Below are positions 23,045 through 32,415 of a stretch of DNA of 64,000 nucleotides, one piece after another. The notes below the pieces were generated by a model. It saw only the letters and a list, made by a program, of their open reading frames with translations. It did not search any database and was not told the origin of the DNA. Source of the stretch: Obrimoposthia wandeli. Lineage: Eukaryota. Every line of letters starts with the position of its first letter. Within the stretch, counting starts at the first letter, position 1. The stretch is from NCBI GenBank assembly GCA_977020255.1, contig CDROCS010005363.1, positions 1 to 64,000 on the forward strand, in the 5' to 3' direction. A program made the translations under genes and the position numbers.

Positions 23045-24403
23045 ATGTATACAATCAACGCTCATATAAACCCAAAATATAATTTACGCGTATTATCGAA
23101 GCGTGAAGTTTCTCAAATCTGCGATGTCAGTAGCCATACCTACGAATTGTTTCGACGCTGTGCTTTTGCTGTATTAAATTGCGGCAGTAATTCCGATGAC
23201 TATTTGTCATCGATAGAACAATTTAAAGATTTTAAAATTCACGTCAACCAAGAAGATCGCGGCATCACCCTTGACCTAAGTGGCGCACCCTCTCACGCGT
23301 TCGTTGATGGTGAAATGATCATTGGTATTCGTGAACATTTATTTTCAGTTTTACGAGATATTTTATATACCGAAGATTCAGTAAAACAAAGTCAGCGCTT
23401 TGATTTAAACAATAGCGAAGATATTACTAATGCAGCATTTCATATTTTACGAAATGCCAACATTTTACAACCTGACTACTTACCAAAATTAGTGGTTTGC
23501 TGGGGTGGCCACTCGATTCCCCGTCATGAATATGAATATACCAAAAAGGTAGGCTATGAATTGGGCTTACGTGGCTTAGATGTTGGCACGGGCTGTGGGC
23601 CAGGTGCGATGAAAGGCCCAATGAAAGGCGCAACGATTGGCCATGCTAAACAACATATAAAAACAGGCCGATATATTGGTATTACCGAGCCAGGGATTAT
23701 TGCGGCCGAAGCACCTAACCCTATCGTAAATGAATTGGTTATTTTGCCTGACATTGAAAAACGGCTTGAAAGTTTTATTCGTTTATCTCATGGTATTATT
23801 ATTTTCCCTGGAGGCCCAGGCACCCTAGAAGAAATTCTTTATTTGCTAGGAATTTTATTACACCCCGACAATCTCGAGATCCCCTTCCCCGTTATTCTAA
23901 CGGGCCCTGCAGATAGTGCAGAATATTTCGATCAGGTAAATAATTTCATTGGTCTAACGCTAGGAAAAAAAGCCCAACAGAGGTATGACATTGTCATTGA
24001 TGATTCCGTTAGAGTTGCCAAAAAAATAAAATCTGGCTTGGTCGATGTATTAGAATATCGAAAGTTAACCAACGATGCCTTCTTTTATAACTGGGGTATC
24101 ACCATTGCAAAAAGCTTTCAGCAGCCTTTCGAACCTACCCATGAGAATATGGCTGCGTTAGAAATCTCGAAATCCTTACCTATTCACGAACTTGCGGCTA
24201 ACTTACGCCGAGCATTTTCTGGCATTGTTGCAGGTAACGTGAAGGAGGAAGGAGTTATGGCGGTTAAAAAACACGGTGTTTTTCAAATCAATGGTGATTC
24301 TGAAATAATGCATGCGATGGATAAATTGTTAGAAAAAATGGCGGCACAAGGGCGAATGAAAATTAATGGCAACTATACTCCTTGTTATGAAATTGTTAAA
24401 TAA
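23045..24403 (+). CDS. ppnN: Nucleotide 5'-monophosphate nucleosidase PpnN (LOG family)
   Basis: VVCWGGHSI, TGCGPGAMKGPMKGA, IEKRLE, FPGGPGTLEE, LRRAFSGIVAGNVK. Confidence 0.92.
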   Translation: MYTINAHINPKYNLRVLSKREVSQICDVSSHTYELFRRCAFAVLNCGSNSDDYLSSIEQFKDFKIHVNQEDRGITLDLSGAPSHAFVDGEMIIGIREHLFSVLRDILYTEDSVKQSQRFDLNNSEDITNAAFHILRNANILQPDYLPKLVVCWGGHSIPRHEYEYTKKVGYELGLRGLDVGTGCGPGAMKGPMKGATIGHAKQHIKTGRYIGITEPGIIAAEAPNPIVNELVILPDIEKRLESFIRLSHGIIIFPGGPGTLEEILYLLGILLHPDNLEIPFPVILTGPADSAEYFDQVNNFIGLTLGKKAQQRYDIVIDDSVRVAKKIKSGLVDVLEYRKLTNDAFFYNWGITIAKSFQQPFEPTHENMAALEISKSLPIHELAANLRRAFSGIVAGNVKEEGVMAVKKHGVFQINGDSEIMHAMDKLLEKMAAQGRMKINGNYTPCYEIVK

Positions 24404-24430: not shown

Positions 24431-25126
24431 CTAGATAGGCAGCTTGTTATTTTGGCTGCCTATTTTTGAAATATTCATACATGTTAAACACATTGCAATA
24501 ATTACAGCTGAGGCTATAAGAACTTGCCATTCAACAACATCAAATTGGAAGGTATAGCGTAACAGGGCCAGTAGGCCGAAATAGCTCACGACCGATAACT
24601 GCAACCACGGCCCAATTTCAAAAGGAAGCCAGTTCACCTTTATATAATTCACTTTTATTTTTTTAGCTAAACATAAACTTATACTTGCAAACATAAGCAC
24701 TACTAGACCAACAATTAAAAAAGAAGCCCATACCCAATACTCTGGCCAATCAACTACCTGGGCAGACTTCGCAGGACCAGACCATAATGCATCCCAACTT
24801 ACGGCTAGAATCAAAGCAAAATTAACCATTAAGTTTGGTGCGGACTTATCGTTCATGGTCAGCAGCTCTTCTTTTACAAAATATGCTATAAATAGAAATG
24901 CGAGTATGCCTACTAGGGGTGTAATAAGTGGTTGTACACTAATACTAAAATACGCAATTAAATATCCTGCCATAGGAAATAACGTATGTGATAGCGTAAC
25001 GCCTAATAGCCATACGCTAATCGTTCTAACGTCGTTCATACTAGAGGCGCGAACAAATGTTGCTAGCGCAACATCAATACCAATGCCGAACCCCATTAAT
25101 ATGCAAGCTAAAAGTATATCAATCAT
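24431..25126 (-). CDS. MntP (manganese efflux)-like membrane protein
   Basis: Two half-repeats with Asp motifs GIGIDVALAT and AVSWDALWSG resembling MntP xDAxxV motifs; about 6-7 TM helices; ATGA overlap with the upstream cytochrome gene. Confidence 0.6.
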   Translation of the reverse strand: MIDILLACILMGFGIGIDVALATFVRASSMNDVRTISVWLLGVTLSHTLFPMAGYLIAYFSISVQPLITPLVGILAFLFIAYFVKEELLTMNDKSAPNLMVNFALILAVSWDALWSGPAKSAQVVDWPEYWVWASFLIVGLVVLMFASISLCLAKKIKVNYIKVNWLPFEIGPWLQLSVVSYFGLLALLRYTFQFDVVEWQVLIASAVIIAMCLTCMNISKIGSQNNKLPI

Positions 25127-26751
25127 GGAGTATTCCAGTTAAGACGAATATCCCAGTCATACCGATATTTTTCTTCAAGCGGCATTGTTTCTTCTACTTG
25201 TTTCAGTACATTTTTAGCGGGTATCAAAACAGCATCACGGCCAAAAATATAACTTTGTTCAGCTACAATTAATTTATACGCTTTATTTAATGCGAGCGCT
25301 CTTTCTTTAGAGGGTGTAATCAAAGAGTAAATAGAATCAAGTTTTTCAACTGCTTCTATATTTACTTGTCCATCTGCATGAAACCAGCGCTTCAACATTT
25401 CACTGTTTTGTCTGAATTCATCACCACCACCCACGCGTTGAAAATACGTAAGATACTCTCCTAACGGTTTTTCCTTCGGCTTCGTATTAGCAGAAGTATT
25501 TATATTAGGAACGTCTGCTATTTTTGTTAAATCAATATACCCCCAGCCGCTATTACCTTCAACTTTACGCGAAAAGGAAAAAATTTGATCAATAGTACTC
25601 CCTAACGTTTTATGACAGCCGTTGCAGAAAGCCATTTCTTGTTTATTTTGCTGACGCAGCTCACCCTGTTCGTTTTCAATATATCCATTAATAATCCAGC
25701 CAAAGCCATTATCTATGCCACGATCACCAATATTTATCGTTTGCGGAAGTTGCCCTAATATTTTTTCTTTCGCTTCAATATAATACGAGCTCTTTAAAGC
25801 CGAAATTGATTTAAATTTCGCTTTTTTCATATAGCGAACTTCCTTCATTCTTGGTGCGTTGTATATGCTTCCATCATCACCAATACCTATGTAGCGAACC
25901 GTATGTAAGAACTCCGTATCTTTTGGATACAGCATATACTCAATACGTATGTCATTTGCATCACCTAGATAAAAGTCCTTATTACTGCCTTGATGCTCTT
26001 TTCCAGATTGCTTAATTATTTGTTCTAGTAAGGCTAGATTTTGTAAATATAAGGTTTCCGAATACTCTCCTCCCTGTTCTCTGAATTTTTTTGGCAAGCG
26101 AATCATAGCATCGCCAGTAGATCCATTAGTGGGCCAAAAACTACTCGGTAAGGGTTTATAATTATAGGCAATCCAATGGGAACCATCTTTGGCGATACCG
26201 TTTACATGAAAAGCTTTTTTAGGATAGGCCAGATTCTTTATTTGAGGCATTTCACCCTTCCAGCTAGCATCCTTATTTAAACGCTGAATAAAAGGGGAAT
26301 AATTATCTTGTGAAACCCAGCTCATTATTTCCTTATCATTAATTCCAGCAATCTCTTTAGTACGGTCTTTAAATAGATTCTTCCAGCTGTTTTTCATACC
26401 CTCATCAGAAAATTCATAGTTGCCTTGCAAACTGGCGTCTTTAACAAAGTTAGGTCTTAAAGGGTCTGTATAGCTTTGATGGCAGATATAGCATGGATTT
26501 TTATCACCGTCCGTTTTGGTATAACACTGCGGCGGAATGACGGATTCTGGATTATAGATTTCGTTATGCTTTAAATACGCTAATGCAGGAATTGAATCCC
26601 GCGATAAATAACCTTCTTTAGGCTTTGTATTTTTAGAATTTTTATCTTTCGCTTGGTTATTAGTATCGGAGCAGGCACTAATAAAAAATAGCGAGGCGAT
26701 ACAAACAAGCAATAAATTAATGGAAAATAATCTAGTTTTCACAGATTTCAT
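25123..26751 (-). CDS. Di-haem c-type cytochrome lipoprotein, uncharacterised
   Basis: Lipobox FISAC; two CxxCH motifs (CYICH, CNGCH). Confidence 0.8.
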   Translation of the reverse strand: MKSVKTRLFSINLLLVCIASLFFISACSDTNNQAKDKNSKNTKPKEGYLSRDSIPALAYLKHNEIYNPESVIPPQCYTKTDGDKNPCYICHQSYTDPLRPNFVKDASLQGNYEFSDEGMKNSWKNLFKDRTKEIAGINDKEIMSWVSQDNYSPFIQRLNKDASWKGEMPQIKNLAYPKKAFHVNGIAKDGSHWIAYNYKPLPSSFWPTNGSTGDAMIRLPKKFREQGGEYSETLYLQNLALLEQIIKQSGKEHQGSNKDFYLGDANDIRIEYMLYPKDTEFLHTVRYIGIGDDGSIYNAPRMKEVRYMKKAKFKSISALKSSYYIEAKEKILGQLPQTINIGDRGIDNGFGWIINGYIENEQGELRQQNKQEMAFCNGCHKTLGSTIDQIFSFSRKVEGNSGWGYIDLTKIADVPNINTSANTKPKEKPLGEYLTYFQRVGGGDEFRQNSEMLKRWFHADGQVNIEAVEKLDSIYSLITPSKERALALNKAYKLIVAEQSYIFGRDAVLIPAKNVLKQVEETMPLEEKYRYDWDIRLNWNTP

Positions 26752-26865: not shown

Positions 26866-26898
26866 AAAAAAAGGAAGAAGGTAAGCCTTCTTCCTTTT
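26866..26898 (-). terminator. Intrinsic terminator after the phoX-like gene
   Basis: GGAAGAAGG-taag-CCTTCTTCC hairpin with A7 on the left, i.e. U7 on the minus strand. Confidence 0.85.
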
Positions 26899-26934: not shown

Positions 26935-28836
26935 TTAACGAGGATCATACATCCATAATGTATTATTTTCTTGAAAGCCATCTTCACCTAAAAGAATACG
27001 GCCATCTTTCATGACGACAACGTTATCTGGCTGAGATAAGTTGTTTACATCACAACGCTCTGCGCCATCAAGTGAGCTGCGGTAAGTCGCGCCCATAATG
27101 ACTGGCTCGATACGAGTAAGGCTATAATCATTTTCGATTTTAGCGCGATAAACTCCACCGCAGTCTTTAATCCGACTGGATAGTTGCATATCACCTTCGT
27201 CATCAATCATCGTTTTATCTAGATCAGCAATAGCCATATACATATAGGCTGCAGTAACGGTTTCATCTGCAACCATATCAGCACCGGTTACGGCTTCTTT
27301 CACACGGTCTTGATGAATTGATATCCCTTCAAGCTTGCGCCATTCTGCAGTAGCCCCTAGCTGGCGGGCAGCTTGGCGAGATTCAAGGAAAGCTGAGCGA
27401 TCATCCATTGGCTGATCGGCAGTAATTTTACCACCTCCATTTGCCAGTGTTGGATACTTAGTACCTGCTGGGCGACCCGCGGTAACCCAAGCAGCCCACG
27501 CTTCAACATCCGCAACCGTCATATAGCTAGATTCACCAGCAACATACTGGTCCGTTCCAATGCCATCGAACTCATTAATCCAAACATCAATTTGAGTATT
27601 ATTACCCGCTGCTAATTCAACCCAAGTAACATCAAACCCTGTTACGGCTGGATCATTCAAACCTGCATCTTGCTGAAGCTTGGCTCCGAATAATGTACCG
27701 ACTGATAAATCTTCAGCCGTATCGGCTACAAACTTAAATAAGACTCCGCCGGTATCATCTTGTGATGCGTATACGGTTTTACCATCAGGCATAACGATTG
27801 AGTTTTCATGTTCATAACGACCGATAGTGAAATGCTTAACAGGTATAGGAGCTGCAGATTCTGGGTCTGTGATCTCTACGATATAACCATAATCATAAGG
27901 ATTGCTCGCATTACTTGATAGCGCCCACATACCTGCTAATAAAGCATCATCAGCAATTTGAGTAGGACTATTCCAACTAGGATTTGTTGTTGAATCAACT
28001 GAAGTATTAACAACCCATTCTTCTGAAGTTAAGGGGGTATTCCAAGGAGATACGGAACCAAAGCAATTGGCACCTGTACCATTAACAGCAGCGAAATCAA
28101 CCATCATTGCATCTAGAACGCCCCAATTACCTTGGGCATCTTTTTCAATATTCATGCGGCTCATACCACCTGGATATAACTCCCAGTTAGTAAATAGGTA
28201 ACCCTTACCAATACCTGTTGAAATAAAACCATTGAAATCAGGCATGTGATTTTCAAATATCTTAGTATCGCCTGCCAGGTTATAAATCGTACCTAACCCT
28301 TTTTCTAACTTACCTTCAAGGGTTGAAGCTGTTTGCCCCAACACTTTATATTGACCATAAGCTGTTTGAACTGTCTGACGTTCATAATCACTTTTAGGGA
28401 CAGGTAAATTAATCAGTGCCTTCGGTAAATTATTAAAATTAATTCCTTCTATAACACCTACTGTTCCTGTGTTATAGGCAACAGCATTGCCGTCAGTTTC
28501 AATATTACTATCAGCAGGGTGCTGGGCGTTGAAGAACAAATCGCCTCCTGCTGTTAAAAATATACCGGTAACCTCTGCACCCGCCGGCACTGTGGCAAGA
28601 CGAGTTAGACCTTCGATTGGATTGCCCATGGTTGATGCATCTTGCCCATCAGTACCATTAAGACCATCAGTACCATTAAGACCGACTAGTCCATCTATAC
28701 CAGAAGACCCTTCAGTACCATTGGTGCCAGGACTGCCATCATTACCATCCGAATCAGCGCCACAAGCCACTAACATAGAGGTTGTCATGGCTAGAAGCAC
28801 TGCCTTATGTAGAGCATTTTTCTTTAGGAGTTTCAT
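26935..28836 (-). CDS. phoX: PhoX-family (DUF839) alkaline phosphatase lipoprotein, circularly permuted, with collagen-like stalk
   Basis: Lipobox LVAC; motifs GAEVTG..FFNAQHP, NWE, NCFGSVSPWNTPLTSEE, GRYEHEN, YASQDD, RKLEG, QPDN, GED. Confidence 0.85.
   Translation of the reverse strand: MKLLKKNALHKAVLLAMTTSMLVACGADSDGNDGSPGTNGTEGSSGIDGLVGLNGTDGLNGTDGQDASTMGNPIEGLTRLATVPAGAEVTGIFLTAGGDLFFNAQHPADSNIETDGNAVAYNTGTVGVIEGINFNNLPKALINLPVPKSDYERQTVQTAYGQYKVLGQTASTLEGKLEKGLGTIYNLAGDTKIFENHMPDFNGFISTGIGKGYLFTNWELYPGGMSRMNIEKDAQGNWGVLDAMMVDFAAVNGTGANCFGSVSPWNTPLTSEEWVVNTSVDSTTNPSWNSPTQIADDALLAGMWALSSNASNPYDYGYIVEITDPESAAPIPVKHFTIGRYEHENSIVMPDGKTVYASQDDTGGVLFKFVADTAEDLSVGTLFGAKLQQDAGLNDPAVTGFDVTWVELAAGNNTQIDVWINEFDGIGTDQYVAGESSYMTVADVEAWAAWVTAGRPAGTKYPTLANGGGKITADQPMDDRSAFLESRQAARQLGATAEWRKLEGISIHQDRVKEAVTGADMVADETVTAAYMYMAIADLDKTMIDDEGDMQLSSRIKDCGGVYRAKIENDYSLTRIEPVIMGATYRSSLDGAERCDVNNLSQPDNVVVMKDGRILLGEDGFQENNTLWMYDPR
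28639..28746 (-). repeat. Collagen-like (Gly-X-Y)12 segment including an exact 18-bp tandem duplication
   Basis: GNDGSPGTNGTEGSSGIDGLVGLNGTDGLNGTDGQD; ccatcagtaccattaaga x2 at 28646-28681. Confidence 0.9.
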
Positions 28837-28897
28837 CACGATATCTCTCTCGATATTTTTTAATAAATCATTGGAGAGCACAGGCTAGGTTATAAAA

Positions 28898-28940
28898 GTG
28901 ACAGTTGTGATAATAATAAATGACATTTATAAGTCATTTA
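28898..28940 (-). promoter_or_regulatory. Candidate regulator site upstream of phoX: Pho-box-like half-sites plus a palindrome
   Basis: Minus-strand ATGTCAT and CTGTCAC half-sites exactly 22 bp apart; perfect palindrome TAAATGAC-N8-GTCATTTA at 28917-28940. Confidence 0.4.
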
Positions 28941-28981: not shown

Positions 28982-29662
28982 TCAATAACGCCTTACAAAG
29001 ATGACAACCCTTCGGTTACTCTCGCGCTGTTGATCTAACGATGCGGTTTCTAATTTTTCTTTCGGTCGACTATCAGCATATCCGGCCGCTTTTAAGCGCT
29101 CTTTCTCAATCCCTTGAGCTAATAAGTATCTCACTACGTTCGTCGCTCGAGCTGAAGAAAGCTCCCAGTTAGAAGGAAATTTTTCAGTATGAATAGGCAC
29201 GTCATCAGTATGTCCTTCAACTTCAACCATATGTGTTTTATGGCTAGTCTCACGAATTACCTGAGTGACTTCTTTTAATGTTGAGATCGCATTTTGTTTA
29301 ATATCTGCAGAGCCAGACTGATAGAGTGCTACGTTAGCAAATTCAACCTTAACGCCTTTAGTATCTAAAGTAACGGAGACTTGATCTTGTAAATTATTTT
29401 GTTCAATTAATTCTTCTAGCCCATCTTTAATATCAGTGAAAGGCGTTGGTGGAGCTTCACCTGTCATCATTTCAGACAGCCCTTCCTTAAGTGCTTCAAC
29501 CTTGCCTTGATTTAAATCTGAAACAGAAAGAATCATGACGAAGAATGCCAGTAACAAGGTGATCGCATCAGAGTAAGTAATTAACCATGAGCTGGAAGCA
29601 TCCTCAAAATTAGGGCGGCGTCGTCTTAAGCTTCTGTGTTTATTTGATACGGACTCAGACAT
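28982..29662 (-). CDS. motB: MotB/PomB-family stator subunit with OmpA-like peptidoglycan-binding domain
   Basis: WLITYSDAITLLLAFFV TM with conserved Asp; EGHTD, SNWELSSARA, NRRV. Confidence 0.92.
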   Translation of the reverse strand: MSESVSNKHRSLRRRRPNFEDASSSWLITYSDAITLLLAFFVMILSVSDLNQGKVEALKEGLSEMMTGEAPPTPFTDIKDGLEELIEQNNLQDQVSVTLDTKGVKVEFANVALYQSGSADIKQNAISTLKEVTQVIRETSHKTHMVEVEGHTDDVPIHTEKFPSNWELSSARATNVVRYLLAQGIEKERLKAAGYADSRPKEKLETASLDQQRESNRRVVIFVRRY

Positions 29663-30465
29663 TAAAGATCTTCTTCTATCGGCTGATAACGCGCACTTGG
29701 CTTAAGATAAGCATTCAATCGATCTTGCATAAATAATGCATCTCGCTTCTCTGCTAATAATACAAAGCCTTCAACAATCATTTGATCACGGAAATATAAA
29801 GATTCTTGCTTTTCGGTTACCTGATTTGCCGCAGGTTTAAAAATAATATTCGCTAATACAACACCGTATAAAGTTGTAATTAATGCCAGTGCTAAGCCTT
29901 TACCAAGGGCGGCCATATCGCCATTCATATTATCCAACATAATAACCAAGCCAATAATGGTACCGACCATGCCAAAGCCAGGAGCATAAACCGCCATGGT
30001 ATTTAATACTTTTGATTCAATCGTCATTCGTTGCCAGAAGGCATCCATATCGTCTGTTAAAATAGTACGTATATCATGATTTTTATAACCACTGCTTAAC
30101 AACTCCATACCATGAGCTAAAAATGGATCTCTTCGTTCTTTTTCAGTTAAAGAAGACTCTAATCCTGCGATGCCCTGTTGACGATAAATCTGGCCCCACT
30201 CAATAAAGCGCTCTACATGTCCCCTTAAATATTTCGAACTCGTAGGCGCATGAAAAAAGGTATCAAATAGCGCTTTAATTGCTGTTAGAACATCCCTCGT
30301 TGTATAACTAATCAAAGAAGCTGCAAACGTACTACCAGCGACTAAAGCAAAACTGGATAAGCTAATAAACATTAGATAATTATTTGTGCTCGAAACTATT
30401 GCATAAATAAAGAGACTGATTGCAACGGTAATACCTACGAGCGTGCTAAACGAAAATCGATTCAT
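29662..30465 (-). CDS. motA: MotA/PomA-family stator subunit
   Basis: R-QQGIAGL-E torque pair, APGFGMVGTIIGL, ALITTLYG..LAN..FKP; 1-nt overlap with motB. Confidence 0.92.
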   Translation of the reverse strand: MNRFSFSTLVGITVAISLFIYAIVSSTNNYLMFISLSSFALVAGSTFAASLISYTTRDVLTAIKALFDTFFHAPTSSKYLRGHVERFIEWGQIYRQQGIAGLESSLTEKERRDPFLAHGMELLSSGYKNHDIRTILTDDMDAFWQRMTIESKVLNTMAVYAPGFGMVGTIIGLVIMLDNMNGDMAALGKGLALALITTLYGVVLANIIFKPAANQVTEKQESLYFRDQMIVEGFVLLAEKRDALFMQDRLNAYLKPSARYQPIEEDL

Positions 30466-30474
30466 ACTAGATCC

Positions 30475-32415
30475 TTAGCTTGGATTCGCAACAGCTATCA
30501 ATTCTTCCATGGAGAAACGGCCTGCTTTTAATACTTCACGCATTTTAGCAACCACTTGATTTCGAGCTTGTTCAGTTTGCTCTTGCGCGGCTTGGCCTTC
30601 TTGTATCTTTAATTCGGTAATAACAGAAGATCGTAATTTCACCGGTAATCCGCTTAATATATGTCGCTTAAATTCTGTTGCAGTATTGCATAAGGAAAGT
30701 GCCATCACGGTACGGTCTATATCTCTAAGCTCATTAGCAATAATACGTTCTGGCGTTCGCATTAAATCGGCATAAGTATAATAAACCTGTCGTAAACGAT
30801 AATAGGTTTCAGGCTTATCCGATTTTAAGGTTTTTAGTAGTCGAGTTTCTTCTCCGCTACTCATAGTATCTAGCATATTAATTAGTACCGACAAACCGTT
30901 CGCTGATACATTTTCAAAGCTCGGAACATTCAATGATTTTTGTGCAAGCCGATCAGCTACATCTTTAAACGTTGATACTGGAAGCGTCTCAAACTCGCCT
31001 AATTCATAAGCTACTGCGGATTGTTCATGCCCTTCTAATCGCTGAACTAAACCCGCACCTCTTTGCGCTGACATCTGTGAAAATACCAATGCTTTAATTC
31101 GAGTTTCTTCTTCCTTAATTAAATAAAGAACTTGGGAGTCATTTAATTTTTCCAAGAATGCAAACGGCGCATTACTACTGTCATCATCACCTAAAGCTTT
31201 TAACATTTCATGCCGAATATTATTTAAACTATTAATTCTTTGATCATCATCTAAAGGTTCTTGCTCTATTCGATTCGATAATGCTTCCGAATCAGCACTA
31301 GCAATTTTTGGACAAAGGCTACGAAACAACCCCTTTCCTAATACGTCATACAATGCAGCTACATTCTGACTGTTACCACTATTTAATTGTTCAGTAATAC
31401 GTTGCTGAAATAATTGCGGCTGCCCTAGCCCAATGGTTACCAATTCTTGTCGCATTTCATTCAACTGTCGGCGCTTATCATTAAAGCTATTATGCGAGGT
31501 ATCTTCAGAATTGCCGATAGCTGCCATTTCAACGGCTGCTGGCACAGTAAAGTTATCGAAATTATCACCTCTACGTTGATTCTCTTTTAGGCTATCACTT
31601 AAACGTTTATTGAATAAGTATAAGGCGAAGAGTAAAAGCAACATCATAAAGCCAAAACAGGCTAACATAATCCAGCCTTGGTATTGCTGCCACCAATCAA
31701 GTACTACATCGGTCTTTTCTTCTTTCTTGAATACAGTTCGTACGATTTTTAATGAATCACCTCGTAACTCATCTAACCGCGCTTTCCTAGTTATTAGGTT
31801 ACGAATAAACTCGACCTGCTGATCGCTTAAAATCTTGTCCAATACGATAGTAATCGTAAGTTTATTAATAGAATTTCGATAACCTAACGTTTTTTCTTTT
31901 ATCTTTTCTATTTGTTTTTCCGCTTCTTTACGTAATTTTTCCGCATAACCTAATGCTTGCTGACGCTCGTTTTCTAGCTGCTGAACTCGTCCTTTTAACG
32001 CGTTTACTTCTGCACTATTATCTTCAAAAATGGGTAAGTCACTGGTGGGAAGTCCCGGTAAAGTTTCTTCAACTTCTTTTGATCGATTACCAAACGATGC
32101 AGGAATTGGTTGAGAAGTGAAGATAGGCCTTTCAGGAATGCTATCTCTTCTTGAACTTGATTCTTCTTTAACAATCGTACGGGTTTTCTTTAACTCTGCT
32201 TCAACATGAATAATGAAACGATTATTACCTAGATACGCTTGTAAGTCCCGATTTAAGCGTGCTTCCATTTCATCTTTAAAGCGAACTTCTTCGATTTCAT
32301 CTTTTTTAGCCGGTACTTCAAATGTTTTTCCAGTCTCCGCATAGGTATTAACGGCTGGATAAATAACTGAACATATAAGGCACAGCTTGATGATACTTTT
32401 TATCAATAATTTCAT
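30475..32415 (-). CDS. FliF(ring-building motif 3)-TM-FliG fusion protein
   Basis: Signal peptide; RBM3-like halves (aa ~47-85 and ~183-229 with RGD); TM aa 248-268; FliG-like PFAFL, EEETRIKALVF, YYTYADL and C-terminal helix EQARNQVVAKMREVLKAGRF. Confidence 0.8.
   Translation of the reverse strand: MKLLIKSIIKLCLICSVIYPAVNTYAETGKTFEVPAKKDEIEEVRFKDEMEARLNRDLQAYLGNNRFIIHVEAELKKTRTIVKEESSSRRDSIPERPIFTSQPIPASFGNRSKEVEETLPGLPTSDLPIFEDNSAEVNALKGRVQQLENERQQALGYAEKLRKEAEKQIEKIKEKTLGYRNSINKLTITIVLDKILSDQQVEFIRNLITRKARLDELRGDSLKIVRTVFKKEEKTDVVLDWWQQYQGWIMLACFGFMMLLLLFALYLFNKRLSDSLKENQRRGDNFDNFTVPAAVEMAAIGNSEDTSHNSFNDKRRQLNEMRQELVTIGLGQPQLFQQRITEQLNSGNSQNVAALYDVLGKGLFRSLCPKIASADSEALSNRIEQEPLDDDQRINSLNNIRHEMLKALGDDDSSNAPFAFLEKLNDSQVLYLIKEEETRIKALVFSQMSAQRGAGLVQRLEGHEQSAVAYELGEFETLPVSTFKDVADRLAQKSLNVPSFENVSANGLSVLINMLDTMSSGEETRLLKTLKSDKPETYYRLRQVYYTYADLMRTPERIIANELRDIDRTVMALSLCNTATEFKRHILSGLPVKLRSSVITELKIQEGQAAQEQTEQARNQVVAKMREVLKAGRFSMEELIAVANPS

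What the first reader, a model, noticed from the sequence alone, without database searches (positions are those of the whole stretch)
26935..28836. Circularly permuted PhoX on a collagen stalk, exported by a lipoprotein rather than Tat signal
Seen: the GAEVTG...FFNAQHP blade, which is the last metal-ligand motif in canonical PhoX, comes first, right after the stalk. The protein ends just after QPDN...GED, which normally precede it. The other Fe/Ca-ligand motifs follow in usual order (NWE, NC, TSEE, HE, QDD, RxxE). The N-terminus is MKLLKK...LVAC with no RR, followed by 12 Gly-X-Y triplets. Established: PhoX is a six-bladed propeller with an Fe(III)-Ca cofactor and is typically Tat-exported. 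Inference: a permuted propeller tethered on a trimerising stalk, with cofactor probably loaded outside the cytoplasm.
Basis: partly seen in the sequence, partly recalled or inferred. Interest (0 to 1): 0.72.

Follow-up and report, generated by a model that had tools for sequence, protein, structure and literature searches.

The report
Circularly permuted PhoX phosphatase lipoprotein
A marine bacterium (Oleispira-like) encodes a PhoX-type phosphate-scavenging enzyme whose ring-shaped fold starts and ends one blade away from the usual place, hangs from a lipid anchor on a collagen-like spacer, and always sits next to a two-haem protein of unknown function.

Summary
Window 26935-28836 (-) encodes a 633-aa PhoX-family protein (PF05787, 98.5 bits). 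It has a lipoprotein signal (LVAC, no RR) and 12 uninterrupted Gly-X-Y triplets. The EVTG...QHP segment that closes canonical PhoX sits at its N-terminus, and the protein ends 14 residues after PDN...GED.

The circular permutation is real:
- PDB PhoX, three Tat-PhoX genes of the same assembly and the Pfam model all match non-collinearly.
- In 12 collinear sister proteins, the parts matching this family's C-terminus and N-terminus lie 1-3 residues apart.
- The old termini are fused directly.

The active-site motif residues are kept. This is a family, not a one-off: at least 195 species of marine Gammaproteobacteria carry it.

New here:
- A di-haem lipoprotein (PF27085) lies immediately downstream in 80/80 loci.
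- A divergent MntP-like membrane protein follows in 26/80 loci and is fused to the di-haem protein in one.
- Pho-box-like sites are enriched about 28-fold upstream.

Cofactor assembly outside the cytoplasm follows from Sec export. A role for the partner in it is only a hypothesis. Trimerisation by the spacer is untested, and its composition (26% acidic, 5% Pro) is unfavourable.

The scan held no earlier report on this gene. The neighbouring pair had been noted (s1-211186) but not followed up.

The parts
26935..28836 (-). CDS of the permuted PhoX-family lipoprotein (633 aa; stop codon at 26935-26937)
   Evidence: ORF list. PF05787 at 98.5 bits against a cut-off of 24. Foldseek top hits are 4a9v and 3zwu, E 1e-11.
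28762..28836 (-). Lipoprotein signal peptide, aa 1-25, ending in lipobox LVAC with Cys25; no twin arginine
   Evidence: Read from the sequence. A lipobox was found in 78 of 80 orthologous loci and Cys25 is invariant.
28639..28746 (-). Collagen-like spacer: 12 uninterrupted Gly-X-Y triplets (aa 31-66). It contains a perfect 18-bp tandem duplication at 28646-28683.
   Evidence: Pfam Collagen scores 20.9 bits, below its cut-off of 27.2. The model is disordered here, pLDDT about 30.
28429..28617 (-). Transposed segment, aa 74-136. It holds strand D of the closing blade (LTRLAT), then the EVTG, FFNAQHP and TVGVIEG strands, which are C-terminal in collinear PhoX.
   Evidence: Model strands are E77-82, 88-94, 100-105 and 125-130 at pLDDT 83-89.
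26938..28428 (-). Remainder of the propeller, aa 137-633. It begins with the equivalent of the mature canonical N-terminus (INFNNLP...VPKSDY) and ends at NNTLWMYDPR.
   Evidence: VIA-align places model 137-633 on 3zwu_A 9-517 (Z 19.1, 385 residues aligned).
28920..28937 (-). Pho-box-like 18-mer (14 of 18 matches to CTGTCATAWAWCTGTCAY)
   Evidence: Across orthologues, sites scoring at least 14/18 occur upstream in 40.5% of 79 loci, against 1.4% of dinucleotide shuffles.
28889..28904 (-). Perfect CTGTCAC half-site whose TGTCA core starts 22 bp after the core of the second repeat of the 18-mer, followed after 3 bases by the -10-like hexamer TATAAC
   Evidence: Read from the sequence.
26869..26898 (-). 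Terminator-like hairpin (13-bp stem plus T run) between the PhoX stop codon and the partner gene
25123..26751 (-). Partner gene: a 542-aa lipoprotein with two invariant CXXCH haem-c motifs (C87/C90/H91 and C376/C379/H380), family PF27085 (Aq_1262)
   Evidence: It lies immediately downstream of the PhoX gene in 80/80 loci. Motif invariance was measured over 81 sequences. Atlas clusters carry PF27085. There is a weak cytochrome c'-beta/P460 fold match for aa about 164-400.
24431..25126 (-). 231-aa polytopic membrane protein, a divergent MntP-like protein, overlapping the partner gene by 4 bp
   Evidence: Homologues are present in 26/80 loci. Orthologues reach the Pfam MntP cut-off (L068 27.1 bits, fusion protein P0223 24.9 bits, cut-off 24.4). 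The window's own copy does not.

Best explanation
This is a phosphate-starvation phosphatase of the PhoX (Fe/Ca beta-propeller) family that has been rebuilt in three ways.

(1) Shown: circular permutation.
- The chain is circularly permuted by about one blade.
- The old N- and C-termini are fused directly.
- New termini open in the hairpin between the third and fourth strands of the blade that carries PDN...GED.
- The EVTG/QHP blade therefore comes first.
- Inferred from the secondary structure: the propeller is still closed by three C-terminal strands plus one N-terminal strand.

(2) Shown from sequence, function inferred: export and anchoring.
- The Tat signal of characterised PhoX is replaced by a Sec-type lipoprotein signal.
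- The protein should therefore cross the inner membrane unfolded, be acylated on Cys25, and fold and take up its metals outside the cytoplasm.

(3) Shown: the spacer.
- A Gly-X-Y spacer of variable length (2-32 triplets in the family, 12 here) separates the lipid anchor from the enzyme.
- Whether it forms a triple helix is open.

The new N-terminus lies in a C-D hairpin. In propellers generally this is on the face opposite the active-site funnel, so the tether would point the active site away from the membrane (inferred).

Operon and regulation:
- The gene is followed everywhere by a di-haem c lipoprotein, and sometimes by an MntP-like membrane protein.
- Pho-box-like sites lie upstream, so the genes probably belong to the Pho regulon.
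- My working hypothesis is that the two accessory proteins supply or oxidise iron for cofactor assembly outside the cytoplasm. This is not shown.
For: Family and fold:
- PF05787 scores 98.5 bits.
- Foldseek top hits are 4a9v and 3zwu at E 1e-11.
- VIA-align against 3zwu gives Z 19.1 over 385 residues, with model 137-633 on chain 9-517. This leaves model 74-136 and the chain's C-terminus unaligned.
- A designed six-blade propeller (6f0t_A) aligns with all 251 of its residues inside model 74-632.

Permutation:
- Non-collinear matches were found with four independent references.
- When the query is put back into canonical order, one canonical-HMM alignment runs across the junction. It covers q596-633 plus q66-119 and scores 18.0 bits, against 11.5 for the N-terminal piece alone.
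- The fused old termini can be recognised.
- In 12 collinear relatives, family-HMM positions about 220-627 are followed 1-3 residues later by positions 75-110.
- In a quick maximum-likelihood tree the permuted and collinear groups join with support 100 apart from canonical Tat-PhoX. The permuted group needs only one origin, with support 94.

Active site: E219, C258, E272/E273, H343/E344, D360/D361, E503, D604, D619, E88 and Q105/H106 are conserved in all three groups.

Export and spacer:
- A lipobox is present in 78/80 loci, and an RR pair occurs in only one signal peptide, outside a Tat-type context.

Accessory genes and regulation:
- The partner lies downstream in 80/80 loci and both its CXXCH motifs are invariant.
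- In a 401-genome phylum sample, PF05787 occurs in 135 genomes but the partner in only 8. Six of those 8 carry a permuted-type PhoX, five of them confirmed next to the partner; G001 was inferred from coordinates.
- G001 has a canonical and a permuted PhoX but only one partner, and it lies beside the permuted gene.
- A natural partner-MntP fusion exists, P0223.
- Pho-box-like sites are enriched: 40.5% against 1.4%.
Against: - No member of this permuted family has been assayed, as far as the literature I could search shows. Phosphatase activity and Fe/Ca content are inferred from motif conservation only.
- I mapped the ligand residues by motif and from my own recollection of the 3ZWU numbering, checked only through the alignment. 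The primary structure paper was not available.
- Model coordinates could not be inspected, so the '3+1' blade closure is read from the secondary-structure string plus the alignments.
- Four Sec-type members of the collinear sister group have no PF27085 partner in their genomes. The partner is therefore not a general requirement of Sec-exported PhoX-like proteins.
- The MntP-like gene is absent from 54 of 80 loci.
- The Pho-box loci are related to each other, so the enrichment overstates the number of independent observations.
Confidence: 0.75

Rival explanations
1. One reading: the Gly-X-Y run forms a collagen triple helix, so that three propellers hang from one lipid-anchored stalk.
For: - Gly at every third position is kept without interruption over runs of up to 32 triplets while X and Y vary freely.
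- The longest run covers a median 82% of the linker.
- A perfect 18-bp (two-triplet) tandem duplication lies in the window's spacer.
- A plain flexible linker would not need this periodicity.
- From my own memory, not checked here: Klebsiella pullulanase is a lipoprotein hydrolase whose collagen-like stretch was reported to stabilise trimers.
Against: - Pro makes up only 4.9% of the X/Y positions.
- The spacer is 26% acidic and 2.7% basic, so three chains would repel each other unless cations bridge them.
- Some family members have only 2-7 triplets.
- Pfam Collagen is below its cut-off.
- Characterised PhoX is described as monomeric (title of the Pasteurella PhoX paper cited in PMC12594817).
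- No multimer prediction was available.
Confidence: 0.35
2. The propeller and the di-haem lipoprotein form a redox enzyme pair acting on something other than phosphate esters. In that case the PhoX name would be a family label only.
For: - The linkage to a haem-c protein is obligate (80/80 loci). Canonical Tat-PhoX lacks such a partner.
- The partner's central domain weakly resembles cytochrome c'-beta/P460, which binds or oxidises small N-oxides.
- A. mediterranea PhoX had low mono- and diesterase activity and detectable sulfatase activity (PMC12594817).
Against: - All PhoX active-site motif residues are invariant.
- Pho-box-like sites are enriched upstream.
- A terminator-like hairpin separates the two genes, which suggests unequal expression, as expected for an enzyme and an accessory factor.
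- The fold match of the partner is weak (Z 5.6, model pLDDT 62).
Confidence: 0.12
3. It is not a true permutation: either an assembly or frameshift artefact, or an unrelated N-terminal addition together with a C-terminal truncation.
For: None found. I considered it because the window lies in a 1.35-Gb mixed assembly.
Against: - The same architecture occurs in 195 species-level genomes and more than 500 protein clusters.
- All family members end at NNTLW(M/L)Y(D/E/Q)P.
- The N-terminal segment is homologous to the canonical C-terminus (E 2e-6) and is contiguous with the family's C-terminus in the sister proteins.
- There are no remnants downstream of the stop codon.
Confidence: 0.02

Closest known systems
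Pseudomonas fluorescens PhoX (PDB 3ZWU, 4A9V, 4AMF), the characterised Tat-exported Fe/Ca alkaline phosphatase
   Same: - Same Pfam family.
- Same six-bladed propeller: Foldseek E 1e-11; VIA Z 19.1 over 385 residues at 21% identity.
- Equivalents of C179, E193/E194, E273, D291/D292 and R385/E387 are present.
   Different: - The chain order is circularly permuted.
- The signal is a Sec lipoprotein signal, not Tat.
- It carries a Gly-X-Y spacer.
- It has an obligate di-haem neighbour.
- The core is only about 25-29% identical.
Collinear PhoX-like sister group (650-750 aa; loci L097-L108). Five of the 12 have a clear Tat signal plus lipobox, others have a twin arginine with an unclear lipobox, two are Sec lipoproteins and two have plain Sec signals. 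All are uncharacterised.
   Same: - They are the closest relatives found: family-HMM E 1e-40 to 1e-47, against 1e-8 to 1e-11 for the canonical HMM.
- The same motif residues are present.
- Many have a Gly/Asp-rich stretch after the lipid Cys.
   Different: - They keep the standard order, with EVTG/QHP at the C-terminus.
- They have no long Gly-X-Y run.
- No PF27085 partner was found in their genomes.
Psip1 of marine picocyanobacteria (PMC11098088)
   Same: A PhoX-like Fe/Ca propeller phosphatase with a non-Tat signal peptide. It shows that such enzymes can work without Tat export.
   Different: There is no detectable sequence relationship to it, no reported permutation, no lipid anchor, no collagen-like spacer and no haem partner.
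Bacterial collagen-like proteins (Scl1/Scl2, BclA)
   Same: An uninterrupted Gly-X-Y run next to a globular domain. There are weak hits to PF01391 and to the NCBIfam SclB model.
   Different: The scores are below the cut-offs, the run is short, it is Pro-poor and one-sidedly acidic, and it sits between a lipid anchor and an enzyme.
Cytochrome c'-beta / cytochrome P460 (for the partner protein only)
   Same: A beta-sheet domain ending in a CXXCH motif. The top five rows of the unbiased structure search, and eight of the first ten Foldseek rows, belong to this family.
   Different: The match is weak (Z 5.6-3.5). The partner is four times larger, has a second haem motif, and belongs to PF27085, a family of unknown function.

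Membership tests
PhoX alkaline phosphatase (PF05787) | Match to the family profile above the curated cut-off | tested here: met
   98.5 bits against a cut-off of 24. The match covers only model positions 149-454 of 515.
PhoX alkaline phosphatase (PF05787) | Six-bladed beta-propeller like 3ZWU | tested here: met
   The AF2 model has pLDDT 78 and pTM 0.79. Foldseek top hits are 4a9v and 3zwu. VIA gives Z 19.1 over 385 residues.
PhoX alkaline phosphatase (PF05787) | Active-site and metal-ligand residues (equivalents of C179, E193/E194, E273, D291/D292, R385/E387, and the PDN, TD and EVTG/QHP motifs) | tested here: met
   The residues are invariant in the family and align with the canonical and sister proteins. 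The ligand list is partly from memory, because the primary paper was not available.
PhoX alkaline phosphatase (PF05787) | Collinear order of blades with the EVTG/QHP blade last | tested here: not met
   The order is permuted.
PhoX alkaline phosphatase (PF05787) | Twin-arginine (Tat) signal peptide, as in the characterised members | tested here: not met
   There is no RR. The signal ends in lipobox LVAC. Of the 78 family signals recovered from 80 loci, 77 lack an RR pair.
PhoX alkaline phosphatase (PF05787) | Fe/Ca-dependent phosphomonoesterase activity | not testable with these tools
   This needs purified protein.
Pho regulon member | PhoB-binding Pho box upstream | tested here: inconclusive
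   The window has a 14/18 match plus a perfect half-site. The family-wide enrichment is 40.5% against 1.4%. The loci are related to each other and no expression data were used.
Bacterial lipoprotein (Lgt/LspA substrate) | Positively charged n-region, hydrophobic h-region and lipobox [LVI][ASTVI][GAS]C | tested here: met
   The signal reads MKLLKK...LVAC with Cys25 invariant. The +2 residue is Gly here and S/G in 70% of the family, so inner-membrane retention is not predicted by the E. coli Asp+2 rule.
Collagen triple-helix repeat (PF01391) | Profile match above the cut-off | tested here: not met
   20.9 bits against a cut-off of 27.2. Some orthologues with longer runs do carry the precomputed Pfam hit.
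Collagen triple-helix repeat (PF01391) | Formation of a trimeric triple helix | not testable with these tools
   Only single-chain prediction was available. The composition is unfavourable.
c-type cytochrome (partner protein) | CXXCH haem-attachment motifs conserved in an exported protein | tested here: met
   Two motifs are invariant in 81 sequences, and the protein has a lipoprotein signal.
MntP manganese efflux pump (PF02659; third gene) | Profile match above the cut-off | tested here: inconclusive
   The window's own copy gives no hit even at E 10. Orthologues score 27.1 and 24.9 bits against a cut-off of 24.4.

The most novel reading that the evidence does not exclude
The permuted PhoX, its di-haem lipoprotein and, where present, the MntP-like membrane protein form a self-contained system that builds the Fe(III)/Ca cofactor outside the cytoplasm. 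In this reading the MntP-like protein exports the metal and the haem protein oxidises or delivers it. That would free a PhoX enzyme from Tat export and allow it to be displayed on a lipid-anchored collagen-like tether.
Probability: 0.25. Interest if true: 0.8.

Novelty: new variant of a known kind. Interest (0 to 1): 0.6.

Why it matters
PhoX is one of the main enzymes releasing phosphate from organic matter in the sea. Its Tat export is usually explained by the need to insert the unusual iron-calcium cofactor in the cytoplasm, for example in the model in PMC12594817.

Here a whole clade of abundant marine heterotrophs (Alteromonas, Pseudoalteromonas, Colwellia, Oleispira and others) carries a PhoX that keeps the active-site residues but must fold and take up its metals after Sec export. 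It is always paired with an uncharacterised di-haem protein.

- This gives a concrete, genetically tractable handle on where and how the cofactor is assembled.
- It gives a first functional context for family PF27085.
- It is a clean natural example of a one-blade circular permutation in an enzyme propeller, with collinear sister proteins still extant for comparison.
- It warns that Pfam- or KO-based counts of 'PhoX' in ocean metagenomes mix Tat-type enzymes with this differently exported form.

Tried and rejected
- The primary PhoX structure paper could not be read. Ligand numbering was therefore reconstructed from the phmmer alignment and from two residues named in PMC11098088.
- Literature searches for a described permuted PhoX, or for non-Tat DUF839 paralogues, found nothing specific. 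PMC12594817 only remarks that PF05787/K07093 retrieve 'paralogs' beyond the Tat-type set.
- A search for the pullulanase collagen-like precedent returned nothing, so that precedent stays a recollection.
- NCBIfam has no model that names this protein or its neighbours.
- The partner has no sequence relative in the PDB and no Foldseek hit below E 0.05.
- Model coordinates are not exposed to scripts, so strand pairing at the closure could not be measured.
- A profile search with the partner listed only close relatives, so its distant neighbourhoods remain unexplored. Genome sampling was used instead.
- Rejected: an artefact or pseudogene origin.
- Rejected: that the partner is a general need of Sec-exported PhoX-like proteins, because Sec-type sister proteins lack it.
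- The reads tools were not used either. No N stretch and no human-like contig was touched.
Full report
**What is there**

Window 26935-28836 (- strand) is a 633-aa ORF. An in-frame GTG lies 15 codons upstream, but orthologues start at the same MKLL..., so the ATG is the likely start.

- The protein matches Pfam PhoX (PF05787) at 98.5 bits, but only over model positions 149-454 of 515. It also matches Pfam Collagen, at 20.9 bits, below that family's cut-off.
- The N-terminus is a classical lipoprotein signal ending in LVAC, with no twin arginine.
- Residues 31-66 are 12 uninterrupted Gly-X-Y triplets.
- E-V-T-G (88-91), Q-H-P (105-107) and P-D-N (603-605) each occur once. The chain ends 14 residues after G-E-D (617-619).

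**Is it a circular permutation?**

Four independent references give the same non-collinear picture.

- phmmer against solved P. fluorescens PhoX aligns residues 250-469 to chain 167-403, and residues 68-111 to chain 507-552.
- Three full-length PhoX genes with twin-arginine signals lie on other contigs of the same assembly. They show the family's N-terminal segment matching their C-termini.
- In an orthologue (G003), the Pfam model itself places positions 462-514 upstream of positions 153-454 within one ORF.
- The AlphaFold model (pLDDT 78, pTM 0.79, residues 1-73 disordered) has 4a9v and 3zwu as its best Foldseek hits. A sequential structural alignment to 3zwu covers model 137-633 against chain 9-517 (Z 19.1, 385 residues). 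This leaves model 74-136 and the chain's C-terminal part unpaired.
- A designed six-blade propeller (6f0t_A) fits with all 251 of its residues inside model 74-632.

When the query is put back into canonical order, one canonical-profile alignment runs straight across the junction. It covers residues 596-633 followed by 66-119 and scores 18.0 bits, against 11.5 for the N-terminal piece alone.

The break can be located:
- The family's end, NNTLWMYDP, matches canonical NNxMLVGDP.
- The start, IEGLTRLATVP, matches the following TGEIKRFLVGP.
- The new termini therefore lie in one beta-hairpin.
- Conversely, TVGVIEG followed by INFNNLP...VPKSDY matches the canonical C-terminal strand followed directly by the mature canonical N-terminus. 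The old termini are fused without a linker.

Read against the model's strand list, the last blade would be made of strands 603-608, 614-618 and 626-630 plus N-terminal strand 77-82. That is the same three-plus-one closure as in the collinear enzyme, moved by one blade. This last step is inferred, because model coordinates could not be inspected.

No second EVTG/QHP copy or remnant exists.

**Direction of the event**

A sample of 401 Pseudomonadota genomes contains PF05787 in 135. Most hits are full-length collinear matches.

- Twelve weaker hits ending near model position 450 were fetched. They are far closer to this family (E 1e-40 to 1e-47) than to Tat-PhoX (E 1e-8 to 1e-11).
- In each of them, family-profile positions about 220-627 are followed 1-3 residues later by positions 75-110. 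They are collinear sister proteins.
- Five have a clear Tat signal plus lipobox with a Gly/Asp-rich start of the mature chain. Others have a twin arginine with an unclear lipobox, two are Sec lipoproteins and two have plain Sec signals.
- A quick maximum-likelihood tree on re-ordered sequences joins the permuted and collinear groups with support 100, apart from canonical PhoX. Each group needs only one origin. This was a quick search with long branches, so I use it only for this coarse statement.
- Since both other groups have the standard order, the permutation is most simply a single derived event.

**Active site**

E219, C258, E272/E273, H343/E344, D360/D361, E503, D604, D619, E88 and Q105/H106 are invariant or nearly so in the family. 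They align with the same residues in the sister and canonical proteins.

C258, E272/E273, E344 and D360/D361 correspond to C179, E193/E194, E273 and D291/D292 of the solved enzyme in the alignment. R500/E503 was matched to R385/E387 by motif only: one search did not align that stretch reliably, and the Arg column falls one residue off. D292 and R385 are named as active-site residues in PMC11098088. The rest of the ligand list rests on my recollection, because the primary paper was not held.

**Distribution**

- More than 500 protein clusters match.
- 195 species-level genomes encode the family. All 80 listed are marine Gammaproteobacteria: Oleispira (78-88% identical, the likely source of this contig), Thalassolituus, Alteromonas, Pseudoalteromonas, Colwellia, Paraglaciecola and others.
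- Databases already call these proteins 'alkaline phosphatase PhoX' or 'cell surface protein'.
- In 78 of 80 loci a lipobox is found, and only one signal peptide holds an RR pair.
- All members end at NNTLW(M/L)Y(D/E/Q)P.

**The spacer**

- The Gly-X-Y run ranges from 2 to 32 triplets, most often 10-18.
- It covers a median 82% of the linker.
- Its X/Y positions are 26% acidic, 2.7% basic and 4.9% Pro, with Asp in 35% of Y positions.
- A perfect 18-bp duplication in the window shows how its length changes.

The conserved periodicity argues for a defined conformation. The composition, and the short runs in some members, argue against a stable triple helix as a general feature. I leave trimerisation at about one in three.

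**Surroundings**

The next gene (25123-26751, -) encodes a 542-aa lipoprotein.

- A homologue lies immediately downstream of the PhoX gene in 80 of 80 loci.
- Its two CXXCH motifs are invariant in 81 sequences.
- It belongs to PF27085 (Aq_1262), a family without known function.
- Its model is mediocre (pLDDT 62). Even so, both an exhaustive structural search and Foldseek put cytochrome c'-beta/P460 proteins first, aligned to residues about 164-400 and ending at the second haem motif. Z values are 5.6 to 3.5 and the next unrelated row scores 3.0. This is a lead, not an assignment.

A third gene (24431-25126, -) overlaps the partner by 4 bp.

- Homologues occur in 26 of 80 loci.
- Orthologues reach the Pfam MntP cut-off, but the window's copy does not.
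- In one metagenomic protein (P0223) the partner and the MntP-like domain are fused.

A strong terminator-like hairpin lies between the PhoX gene and the partner. This fits high expression of the enzyme and lower read-through expression of the accessory genes.

How specific is the pairing?

- In the phylum sample the partner occurs in 8 of 401 genomes. Six of these carry a permuted-type PhoX, five of them confirmed next to the partner; G001 was inferred from coordinates.
- A seventh genome has a divergent, collinear, Sec-type PhoX-like gene next to the partner.
- In the eighth, the partner lies about 0.2 kb from a contig end, so its downstream neighbour is not on the contig.
- Genome G001 has both a canonical and a permuted PhoX but only one partner, and it lies beside the permuted gene.
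- The genomes of the collinear sister group lack the partner.

**Regulation**

Upstream of the gene lie three elements:
- an 18-mer matching the Pho box at 14 of 18 positions (28920-28937);
- a perfect CTGTCAC half-site whose core starts 22 bp after the core of the 18-mer's second repeat;
- a -10-like TATAAC.

Across orthologues, 40.5% of 79 upstream regions hold a site scoring at least 14/18, against 1.4% of dinucleotide shuffles. The loci are related, so this supports Pho control but does not prove it.

**Most likely mechanism**

1. Under phosphate limitation the enzyme is made.
2. It is exported unfolded through Sec and lipidated at Cys25.
3. It is probably sorted to the outer membrane, since the +2 residue is Gly here and mostly Ser or Gly in the family. 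This applies the E. coli sorting rule and is an inference.
4. It folds outside the cytoplasm into a complete six-blade propeller and takes up iron and calcium there.
5. It hydrolyses phosphate esters while held away from the membrane by the Gly-X-Y spacer. The tether enters at a C-D hairpin, on the face opposite the catalytic funnel in propellers generally (inference).
6. The di-haem lipoprotein, with or without the MntP-like protein, may deliver or oxidise iron for the cofactor. This is a hypothesis based only on gene linkage.

**Known or new?**

The family, its lipoprotein signal and its collagen-like hits are visible in databases, so the gene is not a new kind of thing. I found no description of the permutation, of the collinear sister group, or of the PhoX-PF27085 pairing. 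I rate it a new variant of a known kind.

I had reached the same pair independently, and I tested it.

Noticed in passing
whole assembly G000 (window = contig C5363): The assembly has 1.35 Gb in 6912 contigs, yet this 64-kb contig is plainly bacterial and Oleispira-like (about 42% G+C; proteins 78-88% identical to those of Oleispira MAGs). It looks like a co-assembled associate or contaminant of a large eukaryotic genome.
   Followed up: partly
G000 contigs C666, C2735 and C506 (loci L001-L003); fragments at C666:280253-280787 (L005, L006) and C84 (L007): Three full-length canonical PhoX genes with twin-arginine signals lie elsewhere in the assembly; one of them (L003) is a Tat lipoprotein. 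There are also PhoX fragments interrupted by stop codons. Whether any of these belongs to the same bacterium as the window is unknown.
   Followed up: partly
window 25123-26751 (-): The PF27085 (Aq_1262) lipoprotein has two invariant CXXCH motifs, a third invariant Cys (C76), and a central domain that weakly resembles cytochrome c'-beta/P460. It deserves a study of its own.
   Followed up: partly
protein P0223 (802 aa, metagenomic): This is a natural fusion of the PF27085 haem lipoprotein with an MntP-like membrane domain. P0221 (816 aa) may be another such fusion.
   Followed up: partly
L040, about 243 bp after the partner gene (Thalassolituus sp. UBA1087): A second 663-aa ORF follows the partner gene. 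It starts with a signal peptide very like this window's (MKLLQKN...LAAC). It is probably a tandem second copy of the permuted PhoX.
   Followed up: no
L092:3996-5732 (-) and neighbours: A divergent, collinear PhoX-like protein with a plain Sec signal lies directly after a PF27085 gene. The surrounding genes include a tryptophan halogenase, a methyltransferase and a sulfotransferase.
   Followed up: partly
window 23045-24403 (+): A PpnN-type nucleotide 5'-monophosphate nucleosidase gene (PF11892, PF14793, PF03641) converges on the three-gene cluster.
   Followed up: no
window 28982-32415 (-): Immediately upstream lie MotB-like and MotA-like genes and a protein combining FliF C-terminal and FliG domains. 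Other notes of this scan already cover these (s1-211083, s1-211086).
   Followed up: no
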